Shown piece after piece: positions 37,710-56,632 of a DNA stretch of 64,000 nucleotides. The DNA is from Podarcis gaigeae. Taxonomy: Eukaryota. A program made the translations under genes and the position numbers. The DNA is taken from assembly GCA_964106915.2 (NCBI GenBank), contig OZ066914.1; one strand, given 5' to 3'. Position 1 is the stretch's first letter. Every line of letters begins with the position of its first letter. Below the pieces are notes generated by a model that saw only the letters and a program-made list of their open reading frames with translations, was not told where the DNA came from and ran no database searches.

Positions 37710-39885
37710 AGACACTGTTCTTTAATATTATGCTTCTGTGATTTTGTTTTGTATGTTTCTTACAAGCTTGCACCCTGTAATTCACAATAACTTGTTTAGT
37801 ATACAGGTGTCATATTTTCTTCATTTTAACGAAAACCCCTTCTTTCAAGACACTGCAATTCTACAGCACCCATTTTGGGAGAAAGGCTATGATAAAAGGT
37901 TCACAACTGGTGCAGAAAATCTTGCTAAACGATATTCTTACAGTTCTTTTTCCTGTCGGCTATAGAATAGAAAAGTGCTGCCACATATTTTGTTCTCTAG
38001 TATTCTACAGAGTTCTTTTTTATTATTATTCTCATGTGTCACTAGGATAGGAGTGATCTGGTATGGAAAACAAAAAGAGAAGTTAATTAAATTGCAAGGA
38101 AACATAATTATTAAAACATTTTATGTTAATCTACAATAATGTAACGGATTCCTTTTTAATTAAAATTTTGAAATACACTAGATTACATCATTTAAATAAT
38201 CACAAACTAGAAGAGGTAATTGAGCCTTGTTAACAGAAGCATATTTCAGAACGATTTCTGATGTTAAGACATTCCTTAGATTTCTACAATGGGTTTTTAA
38301 CCATTTACAAACAAATCCAGTGATCCGTAGAGGGAGAGAGTATTGCTTATCCACAGGATTATACAGGTATTCTGGAATGTTTGTGAGTGAACTCTGAATA
38401 TATTTCGGCTTCCTTTTCCTTTTATGTGTTACATGCATTCAGTGCAAAGTAAAACTCGGTAAACTGGTTCCTACATGGGCATGAGGGTAGAAGAAGAAAA
38501 CTGATAAGCTAACAAAAGATGGATGAATTAAATGTTTCCTGGGAGAGCAAGCTGAAATGAGGCTAATTATACTGTCTAAACATTCTCCTTTATTGTGTTA
38601 ATACTGCTCTAAATTTGACTGGATGTTGCCTAATGCTGTTATAATATATGCACAATGAAACCAGTCTATCATATATGGTCAAAATTCCTTTTTTCCAGCA
38701 CAATCATGCAGTGTCAGACATCTCACACTCCTATCTGATCCCCACATTATTAACAATATTAGCTCAATATTTTCTCTCTAGAGACCTGCTCCTCATAATC
38801 TGGTGCCAGTAACCCCTAATTACCATAGAGGAAGACATCCCAAGTAGGCCACAAATCTGAAGGGCCTGCCCTGCCCCCCTTGAGCAAGTCTTCACAGGGT
38901 AAAGCCTATTTGCCCTCAGACAGACAACACACATTTTGTTGTCTTCACTGTTATACCTATTTACAAAATGTGCAAAAGATTCCCATTACCCAGAATCTAG
39001 ATCTCACTCCTCTTACCACTTAAGAGCCTCCTCTTATTTCTCCTTAGGCCAAATTGTGCTGAAGTGATTATTTTGGCTAGCCAGATTAACACCTTATGTT
39101 CCTACAGCTCATGCTTAACTTTCACCCCACACTTAACAGGCAGTCTTCCAACTAACAACACTCTTCCTTTTCGCTACCAGCTCAGTCAGTTACACTAAGC
39201 AGAGGGTCAACCACCAACCTCTCAAGATGACAGCCTCTTTTTGACAGTTCTTGTTCAATGGGGCCCTCACTTTATCACCTCATCAGGCAATGCCTCTCAA
39301 AATGGGGAATGTGGCCTCCAGAAGGGTTTGTGGGACACCTACAAGAGAGGGGGTAGCATTTTGTAAGTCTTATTGATAAGTAGGTCTATAAAGAGGCTCA
39401 AGATTTCCCACAATCTGAGTGTCTACCTCATGGATTTGCTGACAGGGAAGGGTGGAATGGTCAGTCACAGACTGCTGTGGGTTACCTGAAGCTAGAGACC
39501 ATGGGCTGTGGAGCAGCTGAGGAGTAGGGGAGCAACTGTGTGTGTAGGAACCACGCAGTTGGGAGCAAAGCAGACATAAAGGTTGTAGGAGCCAGGTAGC
39601 TACACCCAATGAGGTTTCTAAGTTGGGTTGTATGGAAGATCTAACAAGCTTAAAAACAGGGCACATATTTTCCTTCAATTTGAGAAACACTCATTTAAGT
39701 GGTACTCGTCACAAATGAATTCTCAGTAGAAAACGACATCGTTACGGATAGCTTCAATGCTAATTGGCCAGATGAAGTTCATCCTTGGTGCAATTTTTGT
39801 TGAAAAGGAGATCTTCAACCCAAAGCAGGTTGTGAGGAAATTTCTGAGCTTACTTAGCCAAGTCATTTCGCAGTCAGCGATCCTT

Positions 39886-40681
39886 TCATGACCTATTGTG
39901 CGATGCGCTTATCATGATGTTGGGCAAGGCGTTGCGCCGCTTCTTCCAGGAGCCCAGCTCCCGAGAGTACCTCCGTATCTGCCTGAACCAGTGGTGAGTC
40001 CGTGCCTTGTCTCCATCTCGGAAGACAAAAGACTCCCGCCTGATCTCAAGGAGTTCAAACGTGTCGTCGCAGTCGGGATCCACAGAGACCACACAGTTGC
40101 TGAGTCTCAAGGGCTCCCTGAGCAAGCTGAACTTCCCATTGTTTTTGTCCCTAATCAGTACCAGTACTGCATCTTTCACAGGTCCTGGCTCTCCGGGTTC
40201 AAAGCTAGACTCAGAGGTGCGTCTGATGTTGACCATGAGGAGCACTTGCATGTTCTGGAATTTTAAGGTCTTGCTGCCCTTTTTGACCCACTGTCCATCA
40301 GGAGGCTGGGCCAGCTGCAAGGACCCTTCCATCACAAAGCGGGTTTCTTCCCGCAGCCAGCCCACAGTCTTGATAGCGGTTTCCCTCATTTCAATGTTAA
40401 TGACCTCCCTGTTCTTCTTGCTGTCTTGGCGGAAGGAACGCAAAGTCCACGAGTTCCCTTCCTGCTTGGTCTTCATGTTTATGTGCTCCAGGTGGGACTC
40501 AATGCGGCTTTTGGCCTCCCTCAGGCTGCTGTGATCTGGGTGGTACTCAGTGGTGGCTTTGATGATGCGGCTCAGCAGAAGTGGGTACTTGGTGACTCTC
40601 TGCAGTGGAGCCATGAGGAAGGACCGCAGATTCATGCGGCGAAGAGCTGTGTTGTCGTTCTGGGAGACATTGAGGAAAATC
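39886..40681 (-). CDS. RhoGEF last coding exon (end of DH, PH domain, C-terminal tail)
   Basis: ccctgtag|G IFLNVSQNDNTALRRMNLRSFLMAPLQRVTKYPLLL...RRNALPNIMISASHNRS TGA. Confidence 0.95.
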
Positions 40682-43600
40682 CTACAGGGAGGTAAAAAAA
40701 TAACGTATTTTGTAAACAGGTACAGGAAAACAGAAAAGCTTACACCGAGGGTCTTGTTCTTACATACACATGAGGCATTGTTATCTTTAATTAATTAACA
40801 TTTACAAAGTAATTATGACTTAAGATCCCATATATATACTGCTTTCCTGCAAAACCATTTACTTGATTTGCTAGACTCAGGAACATTTTTTATTTTTTCC
40901 CCGTTCTCAGGCTTTGTTTAATGCATCACTAAGGTAAGGTTCAATAGACTTGCTGTTGATATCTTAGCTGTTAAATATTACTCAATTTATGCAAATGTAG
41001 ACACAGGGCAGTATCTAGCATATTAGTTGCAATAGTGCAGGGAATTTTTCACCCTCTCCTTGTCCTATGTGTCCTCTGTGCACCCCCTATATCTGTTCTG
41101 AGGGTTCCCCCAGCCCTCTAAAACGGATTTGGGGAGGAGGTTGGAGGTGCAGGGAGCACTCAGACACTGTACTGGGAATGTCACAGGTGGATGGGCACGG
41201 CCTTTCTATCGTTCTGATAAAGCCCCAGTTGGTGATGTGCCTTTATTGGTAAACTCCTCAGCTCTAGTTGATGCCATGTATCCCGGTGTAAGTGTCTGGT
41301 CATTGGTGAACCCCCTCTCCCCAAAGCATACTTGCTTCAAAGTATGGGCTCATAGACAAACTTTTGCATATCTGAATTAATATGTACAGATGCAAATTCA
41401 GAATTTTAATATTACAGACGATAAGCCCATCGGACACCCCAAATATGTTCAATTATCTTGCACCACATTCCAGATCTGTCCCCTCTTCAATTAATTTACT
41501 CTCGTTTTCCCAACAGATCCTTCTCCAAATCCATTTAATCCCCTTACAATTGCCCCCATTCATTATTATCTCTAGGTACGATCATTTCAAATTCATTTAT
41601 TTCCACAAATTTATATCTTACTAACCCAGATCACACACCCCTCCGACACACCCCCAGTTAATCTCTTGAATACATTACCTACCCAGAAACGCTCAGTACA
41701 TTTAGGAAAAGAAACGGGGTCTGTGCCCCAAGGCATATACTCCCTACCAGGCCTGTGCAAGGGGGCGGGGACAGCTGGGTACACTTGCCCTGGGCCTTGG
41801 AGGGCTAGGGTGACTGGGGGGGCTCCACCAGGGGCCTGCAGGACTTACGGTGTCATGTCAAGAACAAGACTTCCATGCTGGGCTTCATACAAGCTCTGAA
41901 TGGTCCTGCTACCAACCCAAGATTAAGAGGTCTCCTCACCTGAGTAACTCCTTCTCTTTTTCCAGTGCATTGAGCATGTTCACTGAAGATGACTGCTGGA
42001 GGCAGTACGTCTGGAAGGCAGGCAGCATATTGACAAATTCCAGGAATATCTCACCGATGCACACAGTCATGAGGTCATCATCGCCCTGCCGACACACAAC
42101 ACACAAGGCAATGCATCAGCCAGAGACGTGGAGGTACTAGAGGCCATTAAAAGCCACCGGCCTAATATTCAGTTGTGGCGAATGTGCTGGAGTGGAGCTG
42201 GTGACATTGGTGTCTCCGCAGTTTACGGAGCTGAGGTGGGGCAGGGCAGCAGCAAAGGCAGGGCTGTGTGGACATACCAGCAGGAGGAACAGATTGGTGT
42301 CCACACAGCCCTGACCGCATCACCGCCCTGCCCCGTCCCAGCCCTGTCCAGGTAACATGCAGCCCAGACCTACCACCTGGACTGCAACTGCTAATATAAT
42401 TGAAAGCTGATCTTGGACTACACGTTAGCAACACACCTCATGATAGCTGAAACAACAGTGAGTTTCTTTTGGCCATGAACTACAGCTTGAATGCATTCTG
42501 AATAATTAAGCTCTTTCCGCACTGAAAACAAGGAAAGGTGCTACACGTTTTTTCCTTGAACTGCAATCTATTCTCCAAACAGTGGCCCAAGCCCAGTCAC
42601 TAGGAATCACAAGAGAGGAAAATGCTGTTATACTCAGCTTCTGTTTGTGAGCTTCCCATAGGCATCTCATTGGCCACTGTGAGGACAAGATGGTAGGTGA
42701 GATGGGCCTTTGGCCTGATCTAGTGGGGATCTTCTTATGGTTTTCTACTGACTCTGGTAGAACATTAAAAGTGTATGCAAACACAATGCAAAAGTGATTA
42801 ATCTCAGCTTGACAACCATGTTGTTATTCCCTTCCATGTCTTTTAATGATTTACTCTACTGATGTATATTTTTAGAATCTGTTACATTTTGATTCCTAAT
42901 TAAAAAAAGATAAAAGTATTTCACAAAAGACTATTGCAAGACCATTCCCCTTTTTTTGCCAGCATGAGGTGCTGTAGCACAGAGGTTCAATTATGACAGA
43001 GAGTACTACACTATTGCTGAAACAAAAACAAACATTCATAATTAAGGAAACATGCCACCCAACTTAAATGGTTTGCTGAAATCCATTAGCAGACAGCATC
43101 CTTGCAAGTTAAACTGATTTCAGTTGAATTCCATGGATTAAATCTGCACTTTTGAGGTTTTGAAACTGGAGACTGTACCACCCTATTCCCCCCAAAAATT
43201 TCAACCCCATATATGTCAAAATAGAACGCTCAACATCTGAACCCTTTAAACTTACTGCATTAAAATGTGCATGCACACAGATTCCCACGAAGTATTGCAA
43301 TGCAAATTTTGCATATATGATTTTGAGTTCTAAATTAATTTTTAAAATTGTGACTGGCAGAGCTGGAAATGGCTCACAGGATCTCTTTTACGCCTTTGGT
43401 CTTATCCCCCAACTCCTCTATTATCCTTGATTTCCCTCCTTGGCTCCCCAGCATCTTAAAAAGTTCAACTACATCTCTGACGCAGTGGATAGCATTATCA
43501 CATTTCCCCATTTTGGATGATTATATCTTGGCTTTCAAAGACACAAACCTTTTGCCCACTTGCACCACCAGCATGCAGTCCCTGGAAGGTCAGCTATGAG

Positions 43601-46600
43601 GAAATACAACACTTGAACTGAAAAAGGTTCCTTGACCCTCGTCCAAACTGGCTGGGAGTGACCCCCAAGGGTTTCACACAAGACCCTTTTCCAACCCTAC
43701 CTGGGAGATGCCAGAGATCAAACCTTGAACCTTTGTATATAAAACATGACCTCCGAGGACCAAGAAGAATCCCTGTCCTGCCTACTTGTCCATATACCCA
43801 GTACTGTCTTCTCTGATGGCCCTCTAAGGCAGAGGGTCTTCACTGCATCTGCTACATGATCCTTCCCCTTCCCTCCCTTTTAAAAATGGCTAAGTCAGAG
43901 ACTGAACCTGGAACTTTCTGCATGAAAAGCATGTGTTGTCCTGCTGAGCTCTGGCCCTTCCCCAAGGCGATTATCCGGCCTTCAAATAATACTCTCTCCT
44001 GCATTTGACTTGCAAAGTTCAGCAACAGGGCGCAGAGCCGTGTGCCGTACACAGGGTGCTAGTCTGTAATAATGAACCATCAAGAACTGCTGTTCCAGCA
44101 AATTATAAGTAACCTTGAGTACGTTCAAGAAAGAGAGCCAGTTTGGAGCGTGGCTCAAATAACACTTAAAGGATTTAACTAGCCTTGCGTCTGTTCTTGG
44201 CCACCGGCAATTGTTGGCAGGCAAAGCCGCTTTTAATTGCTCTCCTGTGGGCAAGATGGGCTTCTTTGAATGCTGCTGTAAAAATTAATTTCATGGTAAA
44301 AGGGTGTTTTGTTTCTTTCAGAGCCCTTAATAAAGCACAGGGCATAATATAAATACACAGCGGCGTGTAAAAGCCATTCGCTTTGCTGAGGTGCTAGCGC
44401 AACCGTCTGCCTGCCGGCATTGTTTTCCTTCAGCCAATGGAAATGCGGCAATATTTGGAACTGATGGTAGGCTTCGCTGCACAGCAAATTGAAAATGCTA
44501 AAGGGGCAATTCCACATGTCATAAAGCTAGCCCCAGACTGGTCTGTTCAGGAGCACATGGGGCCTTCCCCAGCCTGGTGCCTGCCAGATGTTTTGGACTA
44601 CAACTCCCATCACCCCTTACCATTGGACATGCTGGCTGGGGCTGATGGGAGCTGTAGTCTAACAACACCTAGAGGGCACCAGGCTGGGGGAGGTTGGCAT
44701 AGGGATTCATGCATTGCAGGGGGCTTTCTTAGGTGATTCTCTGATTCTACAAGGCACAAAGGATTTTTGAGATGCTTATTCACCAAGTGGTCTTGAATTG
44801 ACGTATCTTGTTGACAATCACAAAGAAACACAGGCGACCTACGGTAGACTGGGAGCATCCAATCAGAGCTAGAGGCAGATGTTTACTCACACAATTGAAA
44901 TGACAAAAAATAAACAAAAAGTTGGTACCCTTTGGAACAAGAGCACAGGGAAGCTGCCTTATACCAAACCAGATCAACTAGCTCAATACTGTCTTCTTTG
45001 ACTGGTAGCATCTTTCCCAGCCCTACCTGGAGATGGTGGGGACTGAATATGGCACCTCCTACACGCAATGCAGATGCTCTTACACTCAGCAATGGCCCCT
45101 TCCCCCTTTCAGCAGCTAAAATGAGGCAAACAGAGGCATACCCATTCTCAATTCCCTTACCTGCTCATTAGGCATTGTGCCTTTCTAATGAGTGGCACAA
45201 CCTTTGAGTGCCATAGTAACAAAGCTGCAGTGGCAAAAGTAGCTCATTATAACTGCACAGGGAAACGGAGAAGAAATCTGAGACCACACACTACCTGCTC
45301 AAAGGCCTGCTCAATCTCTTCCTGAAGGTACTCCAGGAAGTTTTCGTTGAGGTCAATGAGCTCTTGTATGTTGCCGAAAACCACCAGCAGCTGGTCCTGT
45401 GTTAGCAGGCCAGCAGCTTGCATGGGGAGGTAGAACTCTTCCTTGATGATGCGCAGGTCCTCCCCGTAGCTGGTTTCAGTGTTGACAAACTCCAGCACCG
45501 ACTCCTTCCGCTCTGTCCGGCACTTCAGGCACTTCTCGCAGAGGACGGCCCGCCTCTTGTTCTGGTTCTGGACATCCGTCTCCAGCGGGAAGTGTCTCCC
45601 CCCACAGTCGGTGCAAGGCTGGTGGGCCTCCCACGCCTGCAGAGATGCCAGCGTCTCCGACGCCTTGCTCCTCCACTTCCTACTCAGCACTTGGCTGATG
45701 CCGCTGTCCGCCCGCTCCATCTCAGCCGACCTCATCCTTGGCACCCCTCCACTGCTGGCATCGGCACTGTCCCTCTCCTCACTCCCGCCCACAATGCCGC
45801 TGTCGGCGCTGAGACTGCTGACGTTGCTCCAGCGGTGTTTGGAACGAAAGGAGCCGCCCAGAATGCCGTGGTTCTCATCAACGTTGCTGCTGTAGTTGAG
45901 GTTGGCTTTCGTCAGCACTGGGCCTGAGCGGGGAGGAAAATAAAATAAATCTATTTGTAGAACCTTCCCATTGTTTTGTTCCTCAGCCCTGTTCACCCAA
46001 CAGTAAAAAACTTGTCCTGTTTTGTTTTGTTTTTCTCCTTGTGACCAGGAAGGATTCTGCAAAGTACCTGAATACAGAGACAGGGAGAATCTAGTTCTTA
46101 ATGATATGTTGCTACATTCTGGCATTTTCATACATACATAAAGATTTTCTTTTTCTTCATGCTAAGAAAAGCTTGACCTGATCGCTAAGCATGCTCTTAA
46201 AGGTACAGTAGCAGGTCATTAAAAAAAAAAAAGACAGAAACCCTCCTTGTATTGTACTGGTTAAATTGTCCATCTAGCCTAATGTTACCTCAAAGCCTTG
46301 GTCAAGGTTTCCTTAGCCTTGCCTGCTGAGATCCTTTAAATAGACCTAGACAACTTTTGACCCACCAATATATCCCACTGGCTACATTGCTTGCTGGGTG
46401 CTTCTATATATTTGCAGCCCCCCAAAAGTAGAGGTTTATCAAACTCCTGGTGGGCCACAATGCACAACAGTGTTTAGTCTCATGGGCCACATGCTAGCAG
46501 GTGTACTTGACAGTATGCAAAGAACATATTCCACTTCTGAGTTACATTTCTCTCTTTAATTCAACAGCTAGGGAAGGACGCTCTCATTTGGAATTTGGCT

Positions 46601-49600
46601 CAGGTGTGTTGGAAGAAACAAGCCTGTCCTAATGAACTATGCAAACAACAAGCGGAAGCCACATATTGATGGCTCCATCTGCTCAGTATACTTGCAGAAC
46701 AATTGTTCCAGGTTCTACTCACCTTTTGCTATATCATGCATGAAGTCAAAGAAAGCACTAGATTGAAGCTTAGCTCATGACACTGCCTTACCTTTGCACA
46801 CCCCCTTTCCTGCATTTGCCAGGAGCCAGTTTGGTCCTGTATGGGCCAAATCCAGGCTATTGGCTGTTGCTATGAATTGTACAGACAGAGAGTACACTGG
46901 AGGAGGAGCTGCTACTGTATTCCCTCTCCTCTGGAGGGACCCTGGAATAAGAGGCTACAGCCGGCTGCAAACATAATCCACGGCTGTTGAGTGCGAGATG
47001 TTTGGAGGCTATCTCTCTGAATGATGACTGCTAACCTAATGTCAAAACACACCCAGAACTATGAGCGACATGGACAGACCCTGCAAATCACACACAAAGC
47101 AAAAGGCAAGGGGAGCATACTGGAGTCTCTCTCTTGCCGGCGCTTCTGGGCATGCTGCCGTGCTGCTGCAGCGATCTTCAGCTCCAGTTGTTTCCTCTTC
47201 ACAGCATCTGTTGGCATCGGATCACTGAAATGAGGCCGCAGCCGACACTCCCGTTGAGCTTTGGTGCAGTCCGAAGTTTCGTAGGAGATGTCAGAACTTG
47301 ATCGGCGGCAGTTGGGGCTGGAGCTCTGAAAGGAAAGCAAGGGGTGGTTATGGGGAGAAGTTTCTACTAAACAATATATGAGATATTTAAATAAGGTAAA
47401 GGTAAAGGGACCCCTGACCATTAGGTCCAGTCGTGACCGACTCTGGGGTGGTGGTGCTCATCTTGCTTTATTGGCCGAGGGAGCTGGCGTACCGCTTCCG
47501 GGTCATGTGGCCAGCATGACTAAGCTGCTTCTGGAGAACCAGAGCAGCGCACGGAAACACCGTTTACCTTCCCACCGGAGCGGTACCTATTTATCTACTT
47601 GCACTTTGATGTGCTTTCGAACTACTAGGTTGGCAGGAGCAGGGACCAAGCAAGAAGAGCTCACTCCGTTGTAGGGATTCGAACTGCCAACCTTCTGAAT
47701 GGCAAGTCCTAAGCTCTGTGGTTTAACCCCCAGTGCCACCCGCATCCCTTGAAGATACTTAAATATACATGGCCAAATCCGACACCCAGCACCCACTACC
47801 TCTAAAACCGTTGTTTCTCCTCATATCTTTCTGGCGGGGCAACACCCTCACTCAAGAAAGGAAGCAAAATATGAGCTGTTGGTGTTACATTAAACACATG
47901 TTCATGAAATCTGTGTGCAGCTGTTTAAATGTGCACATAGTTTAATATTGGGGGGGGTGTCAGCAAGCAACATGTATTTTATCGGGCTGTATGGGAGAGT
48001 TGGCAGGACGGGCAACCATATGTGAATAGTATATCGCAGCAGCAGCTTTACTCCAGTTAAGATGGCAACAGCTCTCTTTCCCCAGCCACCACTGTTTGCA
48101 ATCCAAACCCAATGATTTGGATTTGTAAGTGCTTGACTGAGGATGAAACGGGCATTCCTCCCCATGCCTTTCCTTACACGCTTTCTGAAGGCTGGAACTT
48201 TATGTCTGTACTACATATTTAAACCACTTTCCAACTGGTTTCATTGTTATGGGTCATGACCAAGCGATCAAGAAACACTTTTCTGTGAAGAAACTACACA
48301 GATTACTCTGAGCACCCTCACACAGCTGTTGTTCACCCAAAGCTCCAGTTGGGTGAAGCTAGGATAAGAAAACAACTCTCAAACCAATTTTGGGCCTGAT
48401 CCAGCTAACATTATGTGAACAGGTCCTATTGAAAGCAATGGAGAAAGTTAATCACCAGTTCCATTGCTTTCAACAGTACTTTGGGCCACTCCAGATATCC
48501 TTATTGCACACAGGTGATGATTCATATTCATGCTGGTATCGGGGCGGTTATCCACAATCCCACTTTCAGTTGTTTGCACGTGTCATCGTTCTGAGGTGAA
48601 CATACTTTTCAATTGGTGCATGTCCTGTAGCTTCCTGTTGCCTGTAGCTTCCTGTTGAAACCCTGTAACTTTTCATATCTCAAATGTCTCAGGTTTTTTG
48701 TTTTGTCCTGCATTTGTTTTGCTACAGAGCAAGATTATTCCTCCAGACAGGAAATATGCAGTAACACTGGGGAAACATTTGCAGAACAACTGATAAAGCA
48801 GAATAATCATAGCTGTCAACTTTTCCCTTTTCTTGCGAGGAATCCTATTCGGAATAAGGGCATTTCCCTTTAAAAAAAGGAAACGTTGACAGCTATGAGA
48901 ATAATGTGTGGACAGTCCAGCGTCAATCCAACACGATTGCTCTATTACTGCATGAATGACACGCTATGGAATACACCTCCAAAATGCACCAGTCTGGAGG
49001 GGCCCTTAGTCACATGTAACTTTAGCTGGATTTGCACAGTAGTGTTGATGTGCCTTAGGTATCTTCATTCATTAGCTTGTTCCTTGCAGCCACCCAGAAG
49101 CAGGAAGGGTGAGATGGGGTGTGGGAAAACAGGAAAGAGAGAGAGGGGAGAGAGGTAGAAGAAGGGAGGGAGGAAAAGGCATGGAGAGGAGAGCCAGAAG
49201 AGTATTAGTGACAGGGGTGCAGAATAGCTGAGAGCTGTCATAGCAAGTAAAGTTACAGCTCCCTGACCCAACACTTCTGAGACCCCTTTCTGCCCCAGAC
49301 CACGCAACTCACGGTGGGTTGATGCGAGTCCTCCACAAAAGTGAGGTCATCCTTCTTAAGTTCACAGAATCCTTTGGAGGGGGGCTCAGGGGTAGCTTCG
49401 CCACTGCAGCTGTGAAAAAAGGGACACCACCCCAATTAATGTCCTGCACAAACAGCAGTCCAGAGCCAACTCCAAGGGTTGGGAGGAAAATGCATCTTTA
49501 AAGCTACAGTGTATTATTCTACAGGTCTTCTACCTTGTGAAGTCAAAAGCACCTCATATCGTCTTTCTCTTACATACACCATTCCATAAATGTACTTCTA

Positions 49601-52600
49601 ATGATGCAGTGGATAATAGGGTTGTGTGTGTGGATTTTTTAATGAAACATGTTTGTAAATTTAAAGGGTTGCCCCCCCCTTAATATTTCTGTATAAAAGC
49701 AGCATCTAAAGTGCATGAAATCTTTAAGCTTCTCGTCCCTCTTAGTTGTTTTATTTGCACTAAGATAGGAGACAACTTTCTGTTCTGTCATCAGAAAGAA
49801 AGTGCTCCCCTAAATTATCAGATACCATGAATAATTTATCATTCATAAATGATGAGGAAACTATATATCCAAGCCCCGAGGGACAGAAGAGGGAGGACAA
49901 AACCTAGTCACACCCACATATACAGGATTAGCGGTGGAGGAAACAGAGATAATATTTAGCATTTACGTAGCTCACTTGAAGTGTTCACTACACTCGGCAC
50001 ACAATTATGAATGGGTGAAGGGGTTTAAGATTTCCAGGTGTCAATCACACACAAAAATGCATGCTTTGCTTATTTGATATATTGCATTTGGGGATCTTGT
50101 GAATCATCAGGAGACAGCTGTATCCTTCCTTCTGCCTGTGTTAAAGAACTGTATACCATTCTAGATAGTTGCCCTCTAGGCAACCCTTCATACAAAAACA
50201 CAAAACACATCTTTTAAAATAAATATTCTCTGTGTGGCCCATCACACATTTTCTCACAAATATACAGTGAATCTTTGGTTACTATGCTGCTTCATTTAGC
50301 ATTTTTAAAATAAAAAAATTACATCATTTAACAAAACAACAACAGAGTAACTATACCAACTCTGGATAGTGACATTGGATAATATCTGTATGCATATTAT
50401 TCATGTGGCTTGGCTCACTTTCATGAATCACTTGGTATTATCTGATATGAAGACAGCTCAGGGGTGTGTGACTTATTCACTCCTGCTTTCAGCTTGTGGC
50501 ACAGTGTTCTGAATTGATCTGAAAGGAGCTGGTGCATGGATAATCCTGCCTTGTGGGGAAGAAAAGGGAGGTTGGAGTCCATGCCAGTTCAGTGTTCTCC
50601 AACTCTATGGTTCTGCCTAACTGGGATGACAGCGCTTTCTGCCCCACAATATTATACACACTGTGGACAAATTCCCAGCTTAGAATGCAGCTAGCTTGTT
50701 CTATTTCTCAACTGAAGCTAGTTTGGAAGGAAAGGCATCAAAATGCGGTAAAAGTATCTCCCCGCTTATGCATGTTCGATTCTCGCGTGGCCATGTATAT
50801 GCTCAGTGCAGGGAAACAATAGATAGATTTAAACTTCAAAAAGGCAAGAAAAAGGCAAAAGCAGTCCTAAAAGAGCACAAGAACTACAAAAATGGTGTGA
50901 AAAGAGCAGAAAAAAATGGCTAGCAATCCCAGGAGCCTTTGCAACTGCAATCTCATGAGCCTTTGCACCAACCTTTGAGTTAAGTCTGAGAAAGGAGGTT
51001 TGGAGGGAGCGATTGTGGTGGAGTTTGGCATGTTTTGGGTGGCGCTTGGCGGGGAAGCTGTTTACAGGATTTAGATGTGCCTAATATTCTGTGTGCCCTG
51101 CTTCCCAAACCAGCTGTGGAAGTACACTGGATGCAGAATAAACAGAACTGTGAACACCACCTCAGTTTTCCAGAGAAAGAGAGAGTACGGTAGGTATTTC
51201 AGGCGATATGCAAAATGGCAAATTATATTAAAACTACTGGGAATTTTCCTTTGTAGGAAGTTATTTCTCTTTATATTCAAGAAATCATATACACACAGTT
51301 CCATATTTATTGGATACTGGAGTGCTCTTATCTGTACATTAGTTCTCATGATATATATCCTCTCAACTGCCTCTTGGCCGACTGTTTTTGCATCTATTCT
51401 ATCTCTTTCTCCCAGGTGAGAGTAGTTCTTCCATATGGTATTAGAGCAAGGAATTAATGTAATGGACGATTTCTGAATGGGGGGGGGAAATGTACATAAT
51501 GGTACTGCAACTATTTGTGGCTGAGGTGGTTCAATCAGAGATGTGCCTAATTCGAATGAAGCTAGGATGGTCAGTATATGAGGTGGGTGTTGTTTTTGTT
51601 TCTGCTAGACATGGTAATTGGCTTCAGTTTTTGAAGAAGGGTAGTCCATTTGCCTGCTTCACTGAAAAAAAAATTGTTCCCAAGGCTCCGCCCTATTTAG
51701 TACCTCACTGCTGCAGATCCCAAATGGTCCAACTTCATCTTTGATTTTATTATGGAACCATCTTTATCCACCTCTTAAATAACTGAGCAATACTTCAATC
51801 TTGAGGCACCCTGTCATCTAGCATTCCTTCATCTACTCTACAAGCTGGGCCTTTCTGTTATGGCTGAATTTTTCCTCTTCTCACTTCCCCCATATCATCC
51901 TTGACATTGGCTGCTGTTTTGACCTTGAAAGAAAACAGTATTTTGCCCAGCAACTTCATGCACTTTAATATGCTCAAATCCAAATATTATTATTTTTTTA
52001 ACCTTGGGACTTTTATTTCCTTAACTGCTTTCTCTGACATCGTAAAATTTTTGCCTGTCTTTATTCAATTCCTTATATACTGGATGATCTGATTTCCTGC
52101 CCATTCACTGACTTGACTATTAATAATGCCCTAGGTTTTCATCTTTCTCTGTCTTCAGAAGTCAAATTCCTCAGAAAGCCTGGTAAACACAATTCACAAT
52201 CAAAAGGTAAAACAGGTAATAAATCAGGATCTCATTTCAATCATGCTTTCAACCATTTCTTTTTTGCTCAAGTAAAAAAAAAATGCTCTACAATTCATGA
52301 CAGGATTCAGATTATTCCATGAAGATAAAACACTACAAATTAGAGGCTCAGAATTAAAACATTAAGCTGCTTATAAATGTGCTGAGTAAATTACATTTGG
52401 AAGAAAGTTCAGAAATAAAGGGCAGCTGTGTTGCATGTAATTCAAACACACACACAAAATTCCAGCAGAATCTTAAGAAGCCAATGACAAGAATAACCCA
52501 GGAAGTCTTCCACTTCACATGAATGAATGCTAACTTAATCTGAAATGATAAAATTGTCATGGATGAAAAGGGTATCAATGGCCAGTAGTTATGAAGGCTA

Positions 52601-55600
52601 TATTACCTCCAGTATGCCTCTCACTACCAGTTGCTGGACAGCATAAGTGCTATTGCAAAAATGTCCTGCTTGTGGGCTTCTTGTAGGCAACTGGGTGGCC
52701 ACTGTGGTAACAGGATGCTGGACCAAATGGACCTTTGGTCTGATCCAGCAGTGCTCTTCTTATGATTTTATGTGCTGAAAGGATGCTGCTCCATGTAAAC
52801 AATTGACTGTATGCAGCAGCTCACCTTACGGACTGGCCTCACACCAGATCTCCCCATGTTATTCATATTACTGAGGTTTTCTTACAACAAGCACTGGGTC
52901 AAATCATGCGGCATGGGGGAAATCCACACGGCAAGACAAGGCATATGAATACCTGGCCCCATGGAGCAACGGCCACAAGGACCCAATTTCAAGCAGCCTC
53001 AGCGCCACATGTTGCTGAAGTGAACCTAAGGCTTGCAACCCTGTCATTTCACTGCCAAATCCTGAGAATATGTTGCCTTTCAAATCTAGTGACACCCCTG
53101 CCGCTGAGCCAGAAACTCCCATCGTCAAAACAAGATCCTCCATGAGATTGCTAAAGCTCTGGAAGAAAATGACAGCTGGGTTTTGAGAAAATAATGGCTC
53201 TCAGTTTTACAATTTCAAAGGGAAACTGTTTGGTCTCATAAGCTTTTGACTCAAAGTCATGAGAAGCTTGGCAACTGGTTGAAATGACCATTGTGCTTTT
53301 CATAGCAATGAATTAATTTCAGAAAGCTCTGAATGTAAGCAAACTGAGCTTGATAAAGTCCATCTATTACTATGACCCTGCCTGGCAAAATGGATGTTGT
53401 GAACAAAAGAAAACACTGTGCGATGGATCTCAGTCCCATACTTGCAGAACCCATGGCTTACAAGAGCAGAGGCTGGCTCACCTGAGCAGGAGGAGGCGTT
53501 TTTCTGCACTTGGGACAATGGAATCTCTATGTAGATCAGACAAGAGTGCCTCAATTTTTTTAGACCAAAGGGCTGCATTTTCTCAGTCTCCAAGCTCCTG
53601 TGTGGTTTTAAATGTTTGAATACCCCTTTCATTGATTTTTGCTGCTCTGATGGGTTTCACCAGGCTGTATATTATGTATTTTCTGTTGCGTTTATAGTTT
53701 TCTTGTTCTCATTCTTGTTTGTTACTTTAATTTTCAAAATTTGTATTGCCTCATTTTTGCACATCGATAAACCAGATTTTCTGGTTTATTGTGAACTGCT
53801 TCTTTCCCCTCCTAGCACCAGAAAGATAAACTAGGAAGCCTTGGCTTCCTAGTATACCTGAATCAGGGTTCATGGTTTGTGGCTTCCTAGTTTATCTGAA
53901 TCAGGGTTCATGGTTTGTTGATCCGTAACAAACAAACAAACAAACAAACAAACAAACAAACAAACAAACAAACCATGATTACAAGCAAACTTTAAGCCAT
54001 TTAAGCCATAGTTGTTGGCCTATGACATGTGGACCTGTTAGGGAGCAACAAGTCATGATTCCTAGCTTGGATGTAATGGGAAGCCAAGACTTCCTGGTTT
54101 GTTCATCCTGCCTGGGGGGAATGAGGTGGGAGTGATTGAGCATGCTGCTCATTTACAATAAACCACAATCTGCCAGAAAATCTGACTTATCATGATATGT
54201 GAATGTAGATGTGATAGAGCAGAACATAAATCTTTATATATAAACCAATAAGGGTTCCATTCAGTCACCCCGTATGACCCTAGAATAGTGAATCCTAAGC
54301 TTATGGTTCCAACAAGGGAATTCAGTCTCTGCCTTGAACTCATCATGGAAACTATCCCTCATAGGATTTATGTTGTAGGTTGCCCCAAATACACACTGCA
54401 GGAAATCTACCAATATATTAGGTCTCCATAATCATTGATAGCTTAGAAAAGGCAGCATTTTTTGAATTATTTGCCCAAGTCACCTGAAAGTCAGTTTTCA
54501 AGAGGTCACAGACTTTAATATTATGTTTTGTGTCACCTCCATTCACATGATTGACATTTCCTCCAACCTTCTGCCCAGAGTCAATAATTAACCCTCCCTG
54601 TGAAGATCTAGATGTGTGTCAATGAACAAGGAGGACCAGCCATTTCAGTGCCTCAAGGAACAGAGCAAACACTCCCCACGGGGCAGAGGGAGTCCCCACC
54701 TCTCCACAATCCCCAGACTACCCTTCTAGATTGTTAGGCAAACTCCTTCCTGACATCAGATATAGCAGTTAGTTAAAAACCCCAGCTTCATCAGTTCTCC
54801 CAAAGTGGCATATGGGAAAATGTCTGCACAAATTAACACAGCCCCAACACTGTCTCTTTCCCTACAGCTGCCTGATACCTCAAAGAAAGGAACTCCCCAC
54901 AGGTCAAAAGGGGGAAAGCTATTAATGGCGTAAGTGTCTGTGCAAATTATTACACCTCTGCAGCATACTGATTCAGCAAGGAAATTCTATAAATTACTTA
55001 ATGCAGCTAAATTTGAAAGTGCATTTATAAGTACCCGAAAACTGAAATTGCTCTCAAGAACTCTAACAGAGTTGGTTACCTCTTCTTAATGAGGTCCAGT
55101 GCAGAGCCTATAAATTCATCCTTCATTTTCTGCAGTTTAGCTCCATAGCTGGATATATCTGTCGCTTCTAATAGCAATGGGCAGCAAGAAGACTGGTTTT
55201 CAGGCACCACTGGCTGTCCAGCATGGTGGAGGACTTCGCTTAGTTGTCTTGCATTCAATCCCTGAGTCTCCCCTTCAGCAAAAGTTTTCCCTCCCTCCTC
55301 CCTAAGGGCTGCAGCAGACTGTAGAGGTGGTCTTGCAATTGGACTCGAACAAATGGGGACCGGGATTCTATCTGAAGTTGGCACTTCATAGCGCTTGTCC
55401 CTAGCCATAGGCATGTTCATCAGGCAGAAGCTCCTGTCCCATGTAGATGAATTATCTTGATAGCCAACAAGGCCAGAAGTGCTCTGGGTATTTTCATGAA
55501 ACACATCATCATAATAATCTATCGTAGCAACCGTTTCTTTGGCAAGAATTTGCTGGGCACCTGAACAAGGGTTCTGATTTATTTTTTCTTCCAACTTTTG

Positions 55601-56632
55601 GGTTCCTTCCTTCACATCGTTTGTCACGTCACCGCTGCCACCGAGAAAACACGTCTCCTTGATTCTCATCCGCTTGAACTCTTCAAAAGTTGGAATGTAG
55701 AGTCTCTCTTTGAAGTCCCCTTTTTTGCTCAGCTCCAAAATCCTTTTGGTGTCTCCTTCCCCCTCATATCCCTTTAAGGATCCAGTCGTTTGGGACTTGA
55801 CCATGTCCTGGCCATCACTGGCACAATGGAGAGTCAAGTTGGGCGAGCTGTTCTGTCTCCTGATCTGCAACCTTCTCCGAGCTTCTTGCTTGATGTCTTC
55901 TGGGTTTGTTAGTCGGCGAGAAAAGCAAGGGCGATGACTCTCCAGAGCTGTCCATGGCCCGTGAGTGAGGGTGGCATGCTGCACAAATATGGTGCAACAG
56001 TTCACCGAACAACCGTTCTTATATTGCTGGCATGCCCGGCATTCAGAGCATTCCCTTGGAACCAGGTCATTCAAGGAAACCTGAGGTCTGAGAGGCTTGC
56101 AGATCTCTGCAGCTTTACTACTGTGAATTCGAAGTTTTTCCTTTAGGGTTTTTTTGGCATCCCCGTCGATGGAGGAGAAAAGCCACGGAGGCACTTTGGC
56201 ACAAGGAGGAAGGGTGACGTCTCGCGCTGCAGGTGGAATTCTGTCCAACGTGAGAGGGAAGTGTCGGCAGCATTCAGGTGAGCTGGGGGATGGAGTACCT
56301 TCCGCAGAACACTTTGACCAATGAGCTGTGCCTTTGTAACGGACAACAAATTCTTTGTCTACATTTCCGTAGTGGGGATGGCAATGCGGCTCAGCCCCCG
56401 TGGCCCAGTGTAGATTCTCCACACTTCGATACAGATGTGCCCCTGCAGTGCTGTCTGCTTTGCTCACAGGATTAAAGTCCCCAGTAAAAATGCGAGCGTC
56501 CAAGTTCTTCAGTGGATGCATGCTGCTAACTGAGAAATCCTTTAAGCCATGTTGTGCATACAGCTGATTATTCTGGCAGCTCAAAATTACCCGACAGTGT
56601 TCCTGCCTCTCATCAACGCTGATGTATGTCAT
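39886..56632 (-). CDS. Uncharacterised Dbl-family RhoGEF (DH-PH), 1141 aa; complement(join(39886..40681,41940..42085,45295..45923,47121..47325,49313..49409,55080..56632))
   Basis: Six GT-AG exons with consistent phases (2,0,1,0,2) sum to 3426 nt; DH CR1 motif EFVNTETSYGEDL and CR3 motif FLMAPLQRVTKYPLLL; PH-like C-terminus ending HHWFRQI. Start taken as the first in-frame ATG (gctATGA) after an in-frame TGA. Confidence 0.9.
41940..42085 (-). CDS. RhoGEF coding exon 5 (DH middle)
   Basis: cggcag|GDDDLMTVCIGEIFLEFVNMLPAFQTYCLQQSSSVNMLNALEKEKELL(R)|gtgagg; not present in the ORF track. Confidence 0.93.
42600..42745 (+). mobile_element. CR1 LINE 3' fragment
   Basis: ttggccactgtgaggacaagatggtaggtgagatgggcctttggcctgatc...tcttatg. 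Confidence 0.55.
44560..44697. mobile_element. Palindromic hAT-type MITE (ggactacaactcccatc family)
   Basis: ccttccccagcctggtgcc...ggcaccaggctgggggagg inverted arms around ggactacaactcccatca/tgatgggagctgtagtc; degenerate relatives near 10430, 11345, 12185, 13040 and 25205. Confidence 0.75.
45295..45923 (-). CDS. RhoGEF coding exon 4 (DSGI motifs, Cys cluster, DH start)
   Basis: ccccgctcag|GC PVLTKAN...ERKESVLEFVNTETSYGEDLRIIKEEFYLPM...AFEQ|gtagtg. Confidence 0.94.
47121..47325 (-). CDS. RhoGEF coding exon 3
   Basis: ctttcag|SSSPNCRRSSSD...LRPHFSDPMPTDAVKRKQLELKIAAAARQHAQKRRQERDS|gtatgc; phases fit both neighbours. Confidence 0.88.
47394..47748 (-). mobile_element. Full-length Sauria SINE (second subfamily)
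   Basis: (ACCTTT)n tail and tRNA-like head; imperfect TSD agatatttaaata/agatacttaaata. Confidence 0.92.
48624..48657. repeat. Exact 17-bp tandem duplication
   Basis: cctgtagcttcctgttg x2. Confidence 0.9.
49313..49409 (-). CDS. RhoGEF coding exon 2
   Basis: ttttttcacag|C CSGEATPEPPSKGFCELKKDDLTFVEDSHQPT|gtgagt; bridges phase 2 to phase 0. Confidence 0.82.
52575..52770 (+). mobile_element. CR1 LINE 3' fragment
   Basis: ggccactgtggtaacaggatgctggaccaaatggacctttggtctgatccagcagtgctcttcttatg. Confidence 0.7.
53927..53973 (+). repeat. (AAAC)n microsatellite
   Basis: Read directly. Confidence 0.95.
55080..56632 (-). CDS. RhoGEF first coding exon (exon probably extends to an acceptor at 56824)
   Basis: 1.55-kb open frame MTYISVDERQEH...SSYGAKLQKMKDEFIGSALDLIKK; donor AAGAG|gtaacc; acceptor ttttcttctttgcatcatcag| at 56825/56824. 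Confidence 0.85.

What the first reader, a model, noticed from the sequence alone, without database searches (positions are those of the whole stretch)
39916..39948. PKI-like PKA pseudosubstrate (RRNALPNI) at the C-terminus of an uncharacterised RhoGEF
Seen: directly after the PH-domain C-terminal helix the protein reads WKKRRNALPNIMISASHNRS*. Established: protein kinase inhibitors block the PKA catalytic subunit through an R-R-N-A-hydrophobic pseudosubstrate (PKI-alpha RRNAI; PKI-beta RRNALPDI as I recall it, 7/8 identical to this tail), and ARHGAP36 is a precedent for a Rho regulator that inhibits PKA by a pseudosubstrate. Inference: this GEF may bind or inhibit PKA-C, or be gated by it, forming an undescribed cAMP-Rho coupling module. 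Caveat: the aromatic residue at P-11 and Arg at P-6 that give PKI its high affinity are absent (R and W here; Y is at P-13), so binding could be weak.
Basis: partly seen in the sequence, partly recalled or inferred. Interest (0 to 1): 0.8.

Follow-up and report, generated by a model that had tools for sequence, protein, structure and literature searches.

The report
Conserved kinase-decoy tail on a RhoGEF
The last 20 residues of this amphibian-type RhoGEF (the vertebrate counterpart of fly RhoGEF64C, a gene lost in placental mammals) carry a floppy motif, almost unchanged across bilaterian animals, that has every core feature of a protein kinase A decoy substrate, although binding to the kinase is still untested.

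Summary
Observation confirmed. On the minus strand, 39886-39966 encodes ...SRELGSWKKRRNALPNIMISASHNRS*, directly after the PH C-terminal helix.

The gene is not an orphan. It is the vertebrate orthologue (arhgef49 / si:dkey-91i10.2) of Drosophila RhoGEF64C, a family published as lost in placentals.

The motif defines the family:
- In 87 distinct homologue tails (vertebrates, amphioxus, hemichordate, arthropods, molluscs, brachiopod, bryozoan, acoel) the block is G-x-W-[RK]-x-R-R-N-[AG]-[LM]-[AP]-N-I-M-[IML], followed by 3-8 variable residues and the stop.
- The two Arg and the later Asn are 87/87.
- The would-be phospho-site is only Ala (68) or Gly (19), with at least 10 independent A/G switches and never Ser/Thr.
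- It is the second most conserved 13-residue stretch of the DH-PH-tail region.
- Two AlphaFold2 models leave it unstructured (pLDDT below 50) and not packed on the PH or DH domain.

It meets the published PKA pseudosubstrate consensus R-R-x-(A/G)-hydrophobic, but lacks PKI's P-6 Arg and a free P-11 aromatic, and it has no detectable homology to PKI. The invariant W and N-I-M are unexplained.

No paper in the searched library describes the motif. PKA binding is inferred, not shown. Another basophilic kinase, an APC/C D-box or an unknown partner remain open.

The parts
39910..39948 (-). Conserved 13-residue C-terminal motif W-K-K-R-R-N-A-L-P-N-I-M-I. The family consensus is W-R-K-R-R-N-A-L-A-N-I-M-I.
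   Evidence: Translation. Logo of 87 distinct tails. Second most conserved 13-aa window of the DH-PH-tail region (3.71 bits). AF2 pLDDT below 50 and no secondary structure.
39925..39939 (-). Pseudosubstrate-like core R-R-N-A-L: P-3, P-2, P-1, P0 and P+1. The P0 Ala codon is at 39928-39930.
   Evidence: RR is 87/87. P0 is A 68 / G 19 with at least 10 independent switches and no other residue. P+1 is L/M/V/F in 83/87. It matches the consensus R-R-X-(A/G)-hydrophobic quoted in PMC5059767.
39886..39909 (-). Variable trailer S-A-S-H-N-R-S plus the stop codon (39886-39888).
   Evidence: The trailer is 3-8 residues long in most homologues and poorly conserved (1.2 bits).
39955..40008 (-). C-terminal alpha-helix of the PH domain (model residues 226-243), holding the PH Trp and the Tyr at P-13.
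   Evidence: AF2 model of the window's own last exon, helix 226-243 with pLDDT above 90. The Trp is W80/87 in the family.
39955..40344 (-). PH domain (beta-sandwich plus C-terminal helix).
   Evidence: AF2 strands E114-E222 and helix 226-243. The Foldseek top hits of the orthologue model are DH/PH tandems.
39886..40681 (-). Last coding exon: end of the DH domain, the PH domain, the tail and the stop. The acceptor AG is at 40682-40683.
   Evidence: Pfam RhoGEF E 1.9e-13. Sequence at the acceptor. Spliced contig joint 41939|40680, GT..AG on the minus strand. tblastn with the caecilian orthologue gives 86% identity.
39567..39885 (-). 3' untranslated region (at least this much).
   Evidence: The contig of run X1 runs from 40680 down to 39567. 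Single-cell RNA reads lie at 39502-39703.
41939..42089 (-). Penultimate coding exon (middle of the DH domain).
   Evidence: tblastn 88% identity to P0001 residues 887-936. Piece of the spliced contig.
45262..45927 (-). Exon with the start of the DH domain, preceded by a Cys-rich stretch (CxxC ... CxxCxxC at 45520-45615).
   Evidence: Pfam RhoGEF E 2.7e-11. tblastn. Coordinates.
47119..47319 (-). Small upstream coding exon.
   Evidence: tblastn 77% identity to P0001 residues 613-681.
55082..56632 (-). Large first coding exon: a poorly conserved N-terminal region with no Pfam domain.
   Evidence: tblastn 46% identity to P0001 residues 1-533. No Pfam family.

Best explanation
The flagged stretch is the core of a 13-residue short linear motif. 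The motif ends every member of the GEF64C / ARHGEF49 family of Dbl-type RhoGEFs and hangs as a flexible tail from the last helix of the PH domain.

Most likely reading: it is a decoy (pseudosubstrate) for an Arg-directed AGC kinase, and PKA catalytic subunit is the best-fitting candidate.
- The two invariant Arg (P-3, P-2) would pair with the acidic residues of the kinase cleft.
- The Ala/Gly sits where the phospho-acceptor would be and cannot be phosphorylated.
- The Leu/Met fills the P+1 pocket.

Free C subunit released by cAMP would then be captured at the GEF in an ATP-dependent way. This would locally silence PKA around the site of Rho activation, and/or make GEF activity or location depend on cAMP.

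Shown here: the motif exists; it is bilaterian-wide and nearly invariant; it is predicted disordered and exposed; and its pattern of allowed substitutions matches the PKA pseudosubstrate consensus.

Inferred: that a kinase cleft is the partner, that the kinase is PKA, and the direction of regulation.
For: -: in 87 distinct tails P-3 and P-2 are Arg in 87/87. P0 is Ala 68 / Gly 19, with at least 10 independent A/G switches (at least 4 in the cleaner 46-sequence set) and never Ser, Thr, Val or Cys, although Ser is the commonest replacement of Ala. P+1 is L/M/V/F in 83/87. P-1, P-4 and P+2, which PKA tolerates, vary (15, 34 and 14 changes).
- 44/46 rows match RR.[AG][LIVMF], and the tail is the second most conserved 13-mer of the DH-PH-tail region.
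- (PMC5059767): the published consensus for PKA-C substrates and inhibitors is R-R-X-S/(A/G)-hydrophobic. ARHGAP36 uses RRGAV and binds with PKI-like affinity.
- (bioRxiv 10.1101/2021.07.05.451193): the same hallmarks define the SMO PKI motif, which binds PKA-C at about 0.8 uM without a P-6 Arg.
- PKI-alpha reads RRNAIHDI. The window reads RRNALPNI, with 5/8 identical plus I/L and D/N.
- the tail has pLDDT below 50, is coil, and is not docked on DH or PH, as expected for a motif read in trans.
[quoted passage not shown] The residue is not given in the text.
Against: - No binding data of any kind exist, and no multimer model could be run.
- PKI's high-affinity determinants are missing. P-6 is an invariant Trp, not Arg. 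P-11 is Arg in the window. The Tyr at P-13 is H/Y/Q in the family and lies on the PH helix, probably facing the PH core.
- The invariant Trp (P-6) and Asn-Ile-Met (P+3 to P+5; 87, 84 and 82 of 87) are as constrained as the Arg pair but have no known role in PKA recognition. The partner therefore reads more than a PKA cleft is known to read.
- R-R-x-x-hydrophobic is shared by PKG, ROCK, PKN, Aurora and others.
- Two divergent members have Arg at P+1.
- Pfam PKI (PF02827) and PDB PKI chains are not hit by the tail.
- No paper links GEF64C to PKA.
Confidence: 0.35

Rival explanations
1. Same mechanism, different kinase. The tail is a pseudosubstrate or docking site for another Arg-directed kinase that is closer to Rho signalling: Rho-kinase/ROCK, PKN, PKG or Aurora. 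This would give feedback or scaffolding between the GEF and a Rho effector kinase.
For: The constrained positions (P-5 basic, P-3 R, P-2 R, P0 A/G, P+1 hydrophobic) fit several basophilic kinases (established knowledge of their consensus motifs). GEF64C acts through RhoA (PMC2199320). The extra invariant W and NIM suggest a recognition surface larger than that known for PKA.
Against: Invariant Arg at both P-3 and P-2, with Asn or Gly at P-1 and Ala or Gly at P0, reproduces the alphabet of natural PKA inhibitors (PKI N-A; ARHGAP36 G-A). No natural trans-acting pseudosubstrate inhibitor of ROCK, PKN or Aurora with this sequence is known to me.
Confidence: 0.15
2. The motif is an APC/C destruction box. 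R-N-A-L-P-N-I fits R-x-x-L-x-x-[LIVM] and resembles the cyclin-B type RxALGDIxN. It would make the GEF a Cdc20/Cdh1 substrate degraded at defined cell-cycle or neuronal stages.
For: The window and 38/46 family members match R..L..[LIVM] in the tail. The tail is disordered, as degrons are. Ala at D-box position 3 and Asn/Asp at position 6 are typical of strong D-boxes (established knowledge).
Against: The first Arg (87/87), the Trp, the Met and the A/G-only rule are not D-box requirements. D-box position 4 should be Leu, but 17/87 members have M, V, F, R, T or Q there. Position 9 is Ile/Met rather than Asn.
Confidence: 0.1
3. The tail works in cis or on membranes. Either it is an autoinhibitory or activating element that docks on the protein's own DH-PH or N-terminal region, or it is a polybasic-hydrophobic membrane or calmodulin-binding segment.
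For: Its position directly after the PH helix, its net charge of +4, and Trp plus Leu/Ile/Met residues. In Trio/p63RhoGEF, elements C-terminal of the PH domain regulate activity (established knowledge). A C-terminal missense kills GEF64C gain of function.
Against: AF2 with 44-46 sequences finds no docking and no helix. The helical hydrophobic moment is only 0.13-0.16, so it is not an amphipathic helix. Membrane and calmodulin motifs are usually degenerate, not invariant at Asn and at A/G-only positions. The N-terminal half is poorly conserved (46% identity to the caecilian orthologue).
Confidence: 0.15
4. The tail is a linear motif for an as yet unknown partner of a kind not listed above. The match to the kinase consensus would then be coincidental.
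For: Eight of the 13 positions are near-invariant, including W, N, I and M, which no catalogued motif class explains. There is no experimental data.
Against: It would be a notable coincidence that the substitution pattern (RR fixed, P-1 free, P0 A/G only, P+1 hydrophobic) reproduces the PKA inhibitor consensus so exactly.
Confidence: 0.25

Closest known systems
Heat-stable protein kinase inhibitors (PKI-alpha; beta and gamma from memory)
   Same: Shares R-R-N-A-hydrophobic-x-[D/N]-I in a disordered segment. PKI-alpha RRNAIHDI compares with RRNALPNI here. Both have a non-phosphorylatable P-site.
   Different: There is no homology detectable by Pfam or PDB searches. P-6 is Trp instead of Arg, there is no free amphipathic helix with Phe at P-11, and no nuclear export signal.
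ARHGAP36 pseudosubstrate (RRGAV), PMC5059767
   Same: It is a Rho-regulator-family protein that carries an R-R-x-A-hydrophobic decoy in a disordered, Arg-rich region. Family members here with RRGAL are nearly the same pentamer.
   Different: ARHGAP36 is a vertebrate GAP-like protein with the motif near its N-terminus, and it also drives PKA-C degradation. Its binding is shown experimentally, whereas here it is only inferred.
Smoothened PKI motif (bioRxiv 10.1101/2021.07.05.451193; later structural papers)
   Same: The hallmarks P0 Ala, P-2/P-3 Arg and P+1 hydrophobic are present, with an aromatic at P-13 on a preceding helix. Affinity is sub-micromolar without a P-6 Arg, and the motif is conserved in orthologues.
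   Different: In SMO the helix is a free part of the cytoplasmic tail. Here the preceding helix is the PH domain's structural helix, and P-13 is not conserved as an aromatic.
Drosophila RhoGEF64C (GEF64C), PMC2199320
   Same: Same protein family: DH-PH at the C-terminus, a long low-complexity N-terminus and the same tail. A fly homologue named 'rho guanine nucleotide exchange factor at 64C' ends ...WRKRRNALANIMINGMLTRS.
   Different: Identity over DH-PH is about 41-43%. The fly protein is 2-2.6 kaa long. The published work (RhoA-dependent midline axon attraction) does not mention the tail motif, PKA or cAMP.
AKAP-Lbc / AKAP13
   Same: It is a Dbl-family RhoGEF that physically couples PKA to Rho activation (established knowledge). 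Its DH-PH is among the structural matches.
   Different: AKAP13 anchors the PKA holoenzyme through an amphipathic helix that binds the RII dimer. It does not occupy the catalytic cleft with a pseudosubstrate.

Membership tests
PKA-C pseudosubstrate motifs (PKI, RI subunits, ARHGAP36, SMO) | Arg at P-3 and P-2 | tested here: met
   The window has R-R at 39934-39939. It is 87/87 in the family.
PKA-C pseudosubstrate motifs (PKI, RI subunits, ARHGAP36, SMO) | Non-phosphorylatable Ala or Gly at the P-site | tested here: met
   Ala in the window. The family has A 68 / G 19, at least 10 independent switches and no other residue.
PKA-C pseudosubstrate motifs (PKI, RI subunits, ARHGAP36, SMO) | Large hydrophobic residue at P+1 | tested here: met
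   Leu in the window. L/M/V/F in 83/87; four divergent members have R, T or Q.
PKA-C pseudosubstrate motifs (PKI, RI subunits, ARHGAP36, SMO) | Motif accessible (disordered), not part of a fold | tested here: met
   Two AF2 models: the tail has pLDDT below 50 and is coil, beginning right after the PH helix. This is a prediction only.
PKA-C pseudosubstrate motifs (PKI, RI subunits, ARHGAP36, SMO) | High-affinity N-terminal determinants: Arg at P-6, and an aromatic at P-11 (PKI) or P-13 (SMO) on a free helix | tested here: not met
   P-6 is Trp (85/87) and P-11 is Arg in the window. P-13 is Tyr in the window but H42/Y15/Q14 in the family, and it lies in the PH structural helix. These features tune affinity. 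ARHGAP36 and RI lack them, so the core consensus is not failed.
PKA-C pseudosubstrate motifs (PKI, RI subunits, ARHGAP36, SMO) | ATP/Mg-dependent binding to and inhibition of PKA-C | not testable with these tools
   No multimer prediction or assay is available. No literature was found on it.
PKI protein family (Pfam PF02827) | Sequence homology to PKI beyond the pentamer | tested here: not met
   hmmscan of four family tails at E up to 10 gives no PKI hit. phmmer against PDB, which holds PKI chains, gives no PKI hit. It is not a PKI family member, only a look-alike motif.
Dbl-family RhoGEF, GEF64C/ARHGEF49 subfamily | DH domain followed by a PH domain | tested here: met
   Pfam RhoGEF on two exons. 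AF2 DH-PH model at pLDDT 84. Foldseek top hits are all DH/PH tandems, E about 1e-13.
Dbl-family RhoGEF, GEF64C/ARHGEF49 subfamily | Closest relatives are GEF64C/arhgef49 proteins; absent from placentals | tested here: met
   The best hits are a caecilian LOC115093516 (88%), Xenopus, teleost 'arhgef49', sawfish si:dkey-91i10.2 and the marsupial Dromiciops. Insect hits include one named RhoGEF at 64C. None of the hits whose names were looked up was a placental protein (only about 30 of the 150 listed were looked up). Fort & Blangy 2017 report loss in placentals.
Dbl-family RhoGEF, GEF64C/ARHGEF49 subfamily | C-terminal signature G-x-W-[RK]-x-R-R-N-[AG]-hydrophobic-x-N-I-M (signature proposed here) | tested here: met
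   Present in the window and in 89 of the 150 best hits; most of those lacking it appear to be truncated or fragmentary.
APC/C D-box degron | R-x-x-L-x-x-[LIVM] in a disordered region | tested here: inconclusive
   The window matches (R-N-A-L-P-N-I), as do 38/46 family rows. However, Leu is replaced in 17/87, and the other invariant residues are not D-box features. The function is not testable here.

The most novel reading that the evidence does not exclude
The GEF64C/ARHGEF49 family is an ancient, bilaterian-wide RhoGEF with a built-in PKI-type inhibitor of PKA. On this reading the tail captures free PKA catalytic subunit at sites of Rho activation. It would be a direct, scaffold-free cAMP-Rho switch older than the vertebrate PKI, ARHGAP36 and SMO examples. 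It could explain how fly GEF64C converts Rho activity into axon attraction, and placental mammals would have lost it.
Probability: 0.3. Interest if true: 0.85.

Novelty: new variant of a known kind. Interest (0 to 1): 0.7.

Why it matters
Only a handful of proteins are known to block PKA-C with a decoy substrate: PKI, the RI subunits, ARHGAP36 and Smoothened. Each discovery of one changed how a pathway was understood.

Here a motif with the same core sits on a RhoGEF family that is barely studied outside a few fly papers and is unnamed in most vertebrate annotations. Its conservation rivals that of the catalytic signature, so it must do something essential.

If the partner is PKA (or ROCK or PKG), it gives a direct molecular link between cyclic-nucleotide and Rho signalling in axon guidance and epithelial morphogenesis. 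That link can be tested with one peptide and two point mutants.

If the partner is something else, the motif is still a new, sharply defined handle on the regulation of this family. It would also be a candidate explanation for the uncharacterised C-terminal loss-of-function allele reported in 2001.

Tried and rejected
1. Buried structural element of the PH fold: rejected. Two AF2 models end the PH helix at ...RELG and leave the tail as low-confidence coil.
2. Amphipathic helix (calmodulin or membrane binding): disfavoured. The helical hydrophobic moment is 0.13-0.16 and AF2 predicts no helix.
3. Homology to PKI: none by Pfam or PDB HMM searches at E up to 10.
4. Species-specific chance motif: rejected by the family logo.
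5. Verifying PKI-beta and PKI-gamma sequences: failed. Two literature string searches found nothing useful. A 45-aa tail query to the search for homologous proteins returned no candidate because of the word and length rules, so this blank says nothing.
6. Prior description: the strings RRNALPNI, arhgef49 and RhoGEF64C+Pka-C1 gave nothing relevant. The Bashaw 2001 text has no PKA or cAMP mention and does not name the C-terminal missense residue. Simoes et al. 2006 is not held.
7. MAPK D-motif, NLS, PP1 RVxF, 14-3-3, B56 LxxIxE, SIM and LIR patterns: considered by eye against the consensus. None accounts for more than the basic cluster, or each fails at a required position.
Exons were handled by reference, and the orthologue P0001 was used for the DH-PH-tail model.

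Full report
**What is there**

The flagged bases 39916-39948 lie on the minus strand, in the last coding exon of a gene. Translation of 39886-39966 gives SRELGSWKKRRNALPNIMISASHNRS*. The flagged stretch is W-K-K-R-R-N-A-L-P-N-I. The Arg pair is at 39934-39939, the Ala at 39928-39930 and the stop at 39886-39888.

The exon (40681-39886, acceptor AG at 40682-40683) also encodes the end of a Dbl-homology domain (Pfam PF00621, E 1.9e-13) and a PH domain (AF2). tblastn with the best homologue places further exons at 42088-41939, 45927-45262 (start of the DH domain, Pfam E 2.7e-11), 47319-47119 and 56632-55082.

The exon is expressed and spliced in a close relative. A contig of run X1 joins 41939 to 40680 (GT..AG on the minus strand), continues into the next upstream exon, covers the 3'UTR down to 39567, and has no difference from the window between 39832 and 40182. 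Single-cell RNA reads of the same organism label lie on the exon. The plus strand here holds only mechanical ORFs.

**Which gene**

An exhaustive phmmer search with the last exon found 1242 proteins. The best named hits are:
- a caecilian 'uncharacterized LOC115093516' (88% identity);
- Xenopus laevis LOC108701252;
- a teleost protein called arhgef49;
- a sawfish si:dkey-91i10.2;
- a marsupial (Dromiciops) protein.

At 37-47% identity come amphioxus, Ptychodera, spider, Limulus, flies (one named 'rho guanine nucleotide exchange factor at 64C'), aphid, shrimp, bivalves, abalone, Elysia, Lingula and Bugula, plus an acoel at 27%.

Fort & Blangy 2017 (PMC5499878) describe exactly this family. GEF64C is present in protostomes and in fishes, amphibians and marsupials, but lost in placentals and nematodes. 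So the 'uncharacterised RhoGEF' is the vertebrate orthologue of Drosophila RhoGEF64C. That protein is a RhoA-directed GEF that promotes midline axon attraction (Bashaw et al. 2001, PMC2199320). The orthologue's DH-PH model (pLDDT 84) matches solved DH/PH tandems. By sequence the nearest solved relative is intersectin.

**The motif is the signature of the family**

Printing the C-termini of the 150 best hits shows the same ending in almost every complete sequence. In 87 distinct tails the counts are as follows.

| Position | Residues (of 87) |
|---|---|
| two before the Trp | G 78 |
| P-6 | W 85 |
| P-5 | R 74, K 10 |
| P-4 | variable, mostly K/R |
| P-3 | R 87 |
| P-2 | R 87 |
| P-1 | N 71, G 7, eight other residues |
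| P0 | A 68, G 19 |
| P+1 | L 70, M 9, V 2, F 2, other 4 |
| P+2 | A 49, P 32 |
| P+3 | N 87 |
| P+4 | I 84 |
| P+5 | M 82 |
| P+6 | I/M/L/V 84 |

After P+6 come 3-8 poorly conserved residues and the stop.

In an alignment chosen without regard to the tail (A1, 46 DH-PH-tail sequences), the 13-mer scores 3.71 bits per column. Only the catalytic PxQRxxKYPLLL block of the DH domain scores higher (3.95). The DH mean is 2.85 and the PH mean 2.24.

**Structural state**

Two AF2 runs were made: the caecilian DH-PH-tail with 46 sequences and the window's own last exon with 44 sequences. Both end the PH C-terminal helix at ...RELG. Both leave the tail as coil with pLDDT below 50, and it is docked on neither domain. 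The helical hydrophobic moment of the motif is only 0.13-0.16. Extreme conservation combined with predicted disorder is the usual mark of a linear motif read by another protein. 'Buried in the PH fold' is not supported.

**Does it look like a PKA decoy?**

The published consensus for PKA-C substrates and inhibitors is R-R-X-S/(A/G)-hydrophobic. ARHGAP36 uses RRGAV (Eccles et al. 2016). Happ et al. list the same hallmarks for Smoothened, plus an aromatic at P-13 on a preceding helix.

The family's substitution pattern mirrors this closely:
- The positions PKA reads (P-3, P-2) never change.
- The positions it tolerates (P-4, P-1, P+2) change 34, 15 and 14 times on the tree.
- P+1 stays hydrophobic in 83/87.
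- P0 flips between Ala and Gly at least 10 times (at least 4 in the cleaner set), and is never Ser, Thr, Val or Cys.

Ser is the commonest evolutionary replacement for Ala. Its complete absence is what a pseudosubstrate needs and is hard to explain by size alone. 44/46 rows match RR.[AG][LIVMF].

PKI-alpha, verified from PDB chains and a paper, reads RRNAIHDI against RRNALPNI here.

**What does not fit**

- PKI's affinity determinants are missing. P-6 is an invariant Trp rather than Arg, and P-11 is Arg.
- The Tyr at P-13 sits in the PH helix on or near its buried face, and is H/Y/Q across the family.
- The invariant Trp and Asn-Ile-Met are unexplained by anything known about PKA recognition.
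- There is no homology to PKI, so this is mimicry, not descent.
- The same R-R-x-x-hydrophobic core suits ROCK, PKN, PKG and Aurora.
- R-N-A-L-P-N-I also fits the APC/C D-box pattern (38/46 rows). However, the first Arg, the A/G rule and the 17/87 non-Leu residues at D-box position 4 argue against that reading.
- No paper links GEF64C with PKA or mentions the tail.

One old observation is suggestive. An EMS missense 'at the COOH terminus' abolishes GEF64C gain of function. The residue is only in a figure that I cannot read.

**Verdict**

The tail is a bilaterian-wide, near-invariant, disordered C-terminal motif of the GEF64C/ARHGEF49 family.

| Reading | Probability |
|---|---|
| Decoy substrate for PKA-C | about 0.35 |
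| Decoy substrate for another basophilic kinase | 0.15 |
| Unknown partner | 0.25 |
| Cis or membrane role | 0.15 |
| D-box | 0.10 |

No multimer model or assay could be run, so kinase binding is inference. The joined coding sequence of the window was deliberately not assembled or searched.

Noticed in passing
window 45520-45615 (minus strand): Just before the first DH helix the protein reads C-x2-C ... C-x2-C-x2-C. The last two Cys (C17 and C20 of alignment A1) are at least 90% conserved across the family, which suggests a small metal-binding or redox element attached to the DH domain.
   Followed up: partly
window 39886-56632 (minus strand): The whole gene is the vertebrate orthologue of Drosophila RhoGEF64C, a Dbl GEF reported as lost in placental mammals. 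Most vertebrate records call it 'uncharacterized LOC' or si:dkey-91i10.2, and a few call it arhgef49.
   Followed up: yes
window 55082-56632 (minus strand): The large first exon (about 520 aa) has no Pfam domain and is only 46% identical to the caecilian orthologue, against 86-88% for the DH-PH exons. It is a fast-evolving, probably disordered N-terminal half.
   Followed up: partly
window 41772-41807: A 36-base G-rich stretch in the last intron is matched at 90-95% by RNA reads and by several unrelated contigs whose flanks do not fit the window. It is most likely a short dispersed repeat or a conserved piece of other transcripts, not part of this gene's mRNA.
   Followed up: no
window 39521-39523: The related organism's contig carries 2-base and 12-base insertions (GGAGTAGCGGAG) here, at the far end of or just past the 3'UTR. 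The coding tail itself is identical.
   Followed up: no
P0052 (shrimp), P0084 and P0091 (unnamed metagenomic or transcriptome proteins): These are rare variants of the motif. The shrimp has W-K-R-R-R-S-A-L, which creates an RRxS site one residue upstream of the usual P0. Two divergent members have Arg at P+1 (RR[AG]GRPNIM). They are natural experiments for what the partner tolerates.
   Followed up: no
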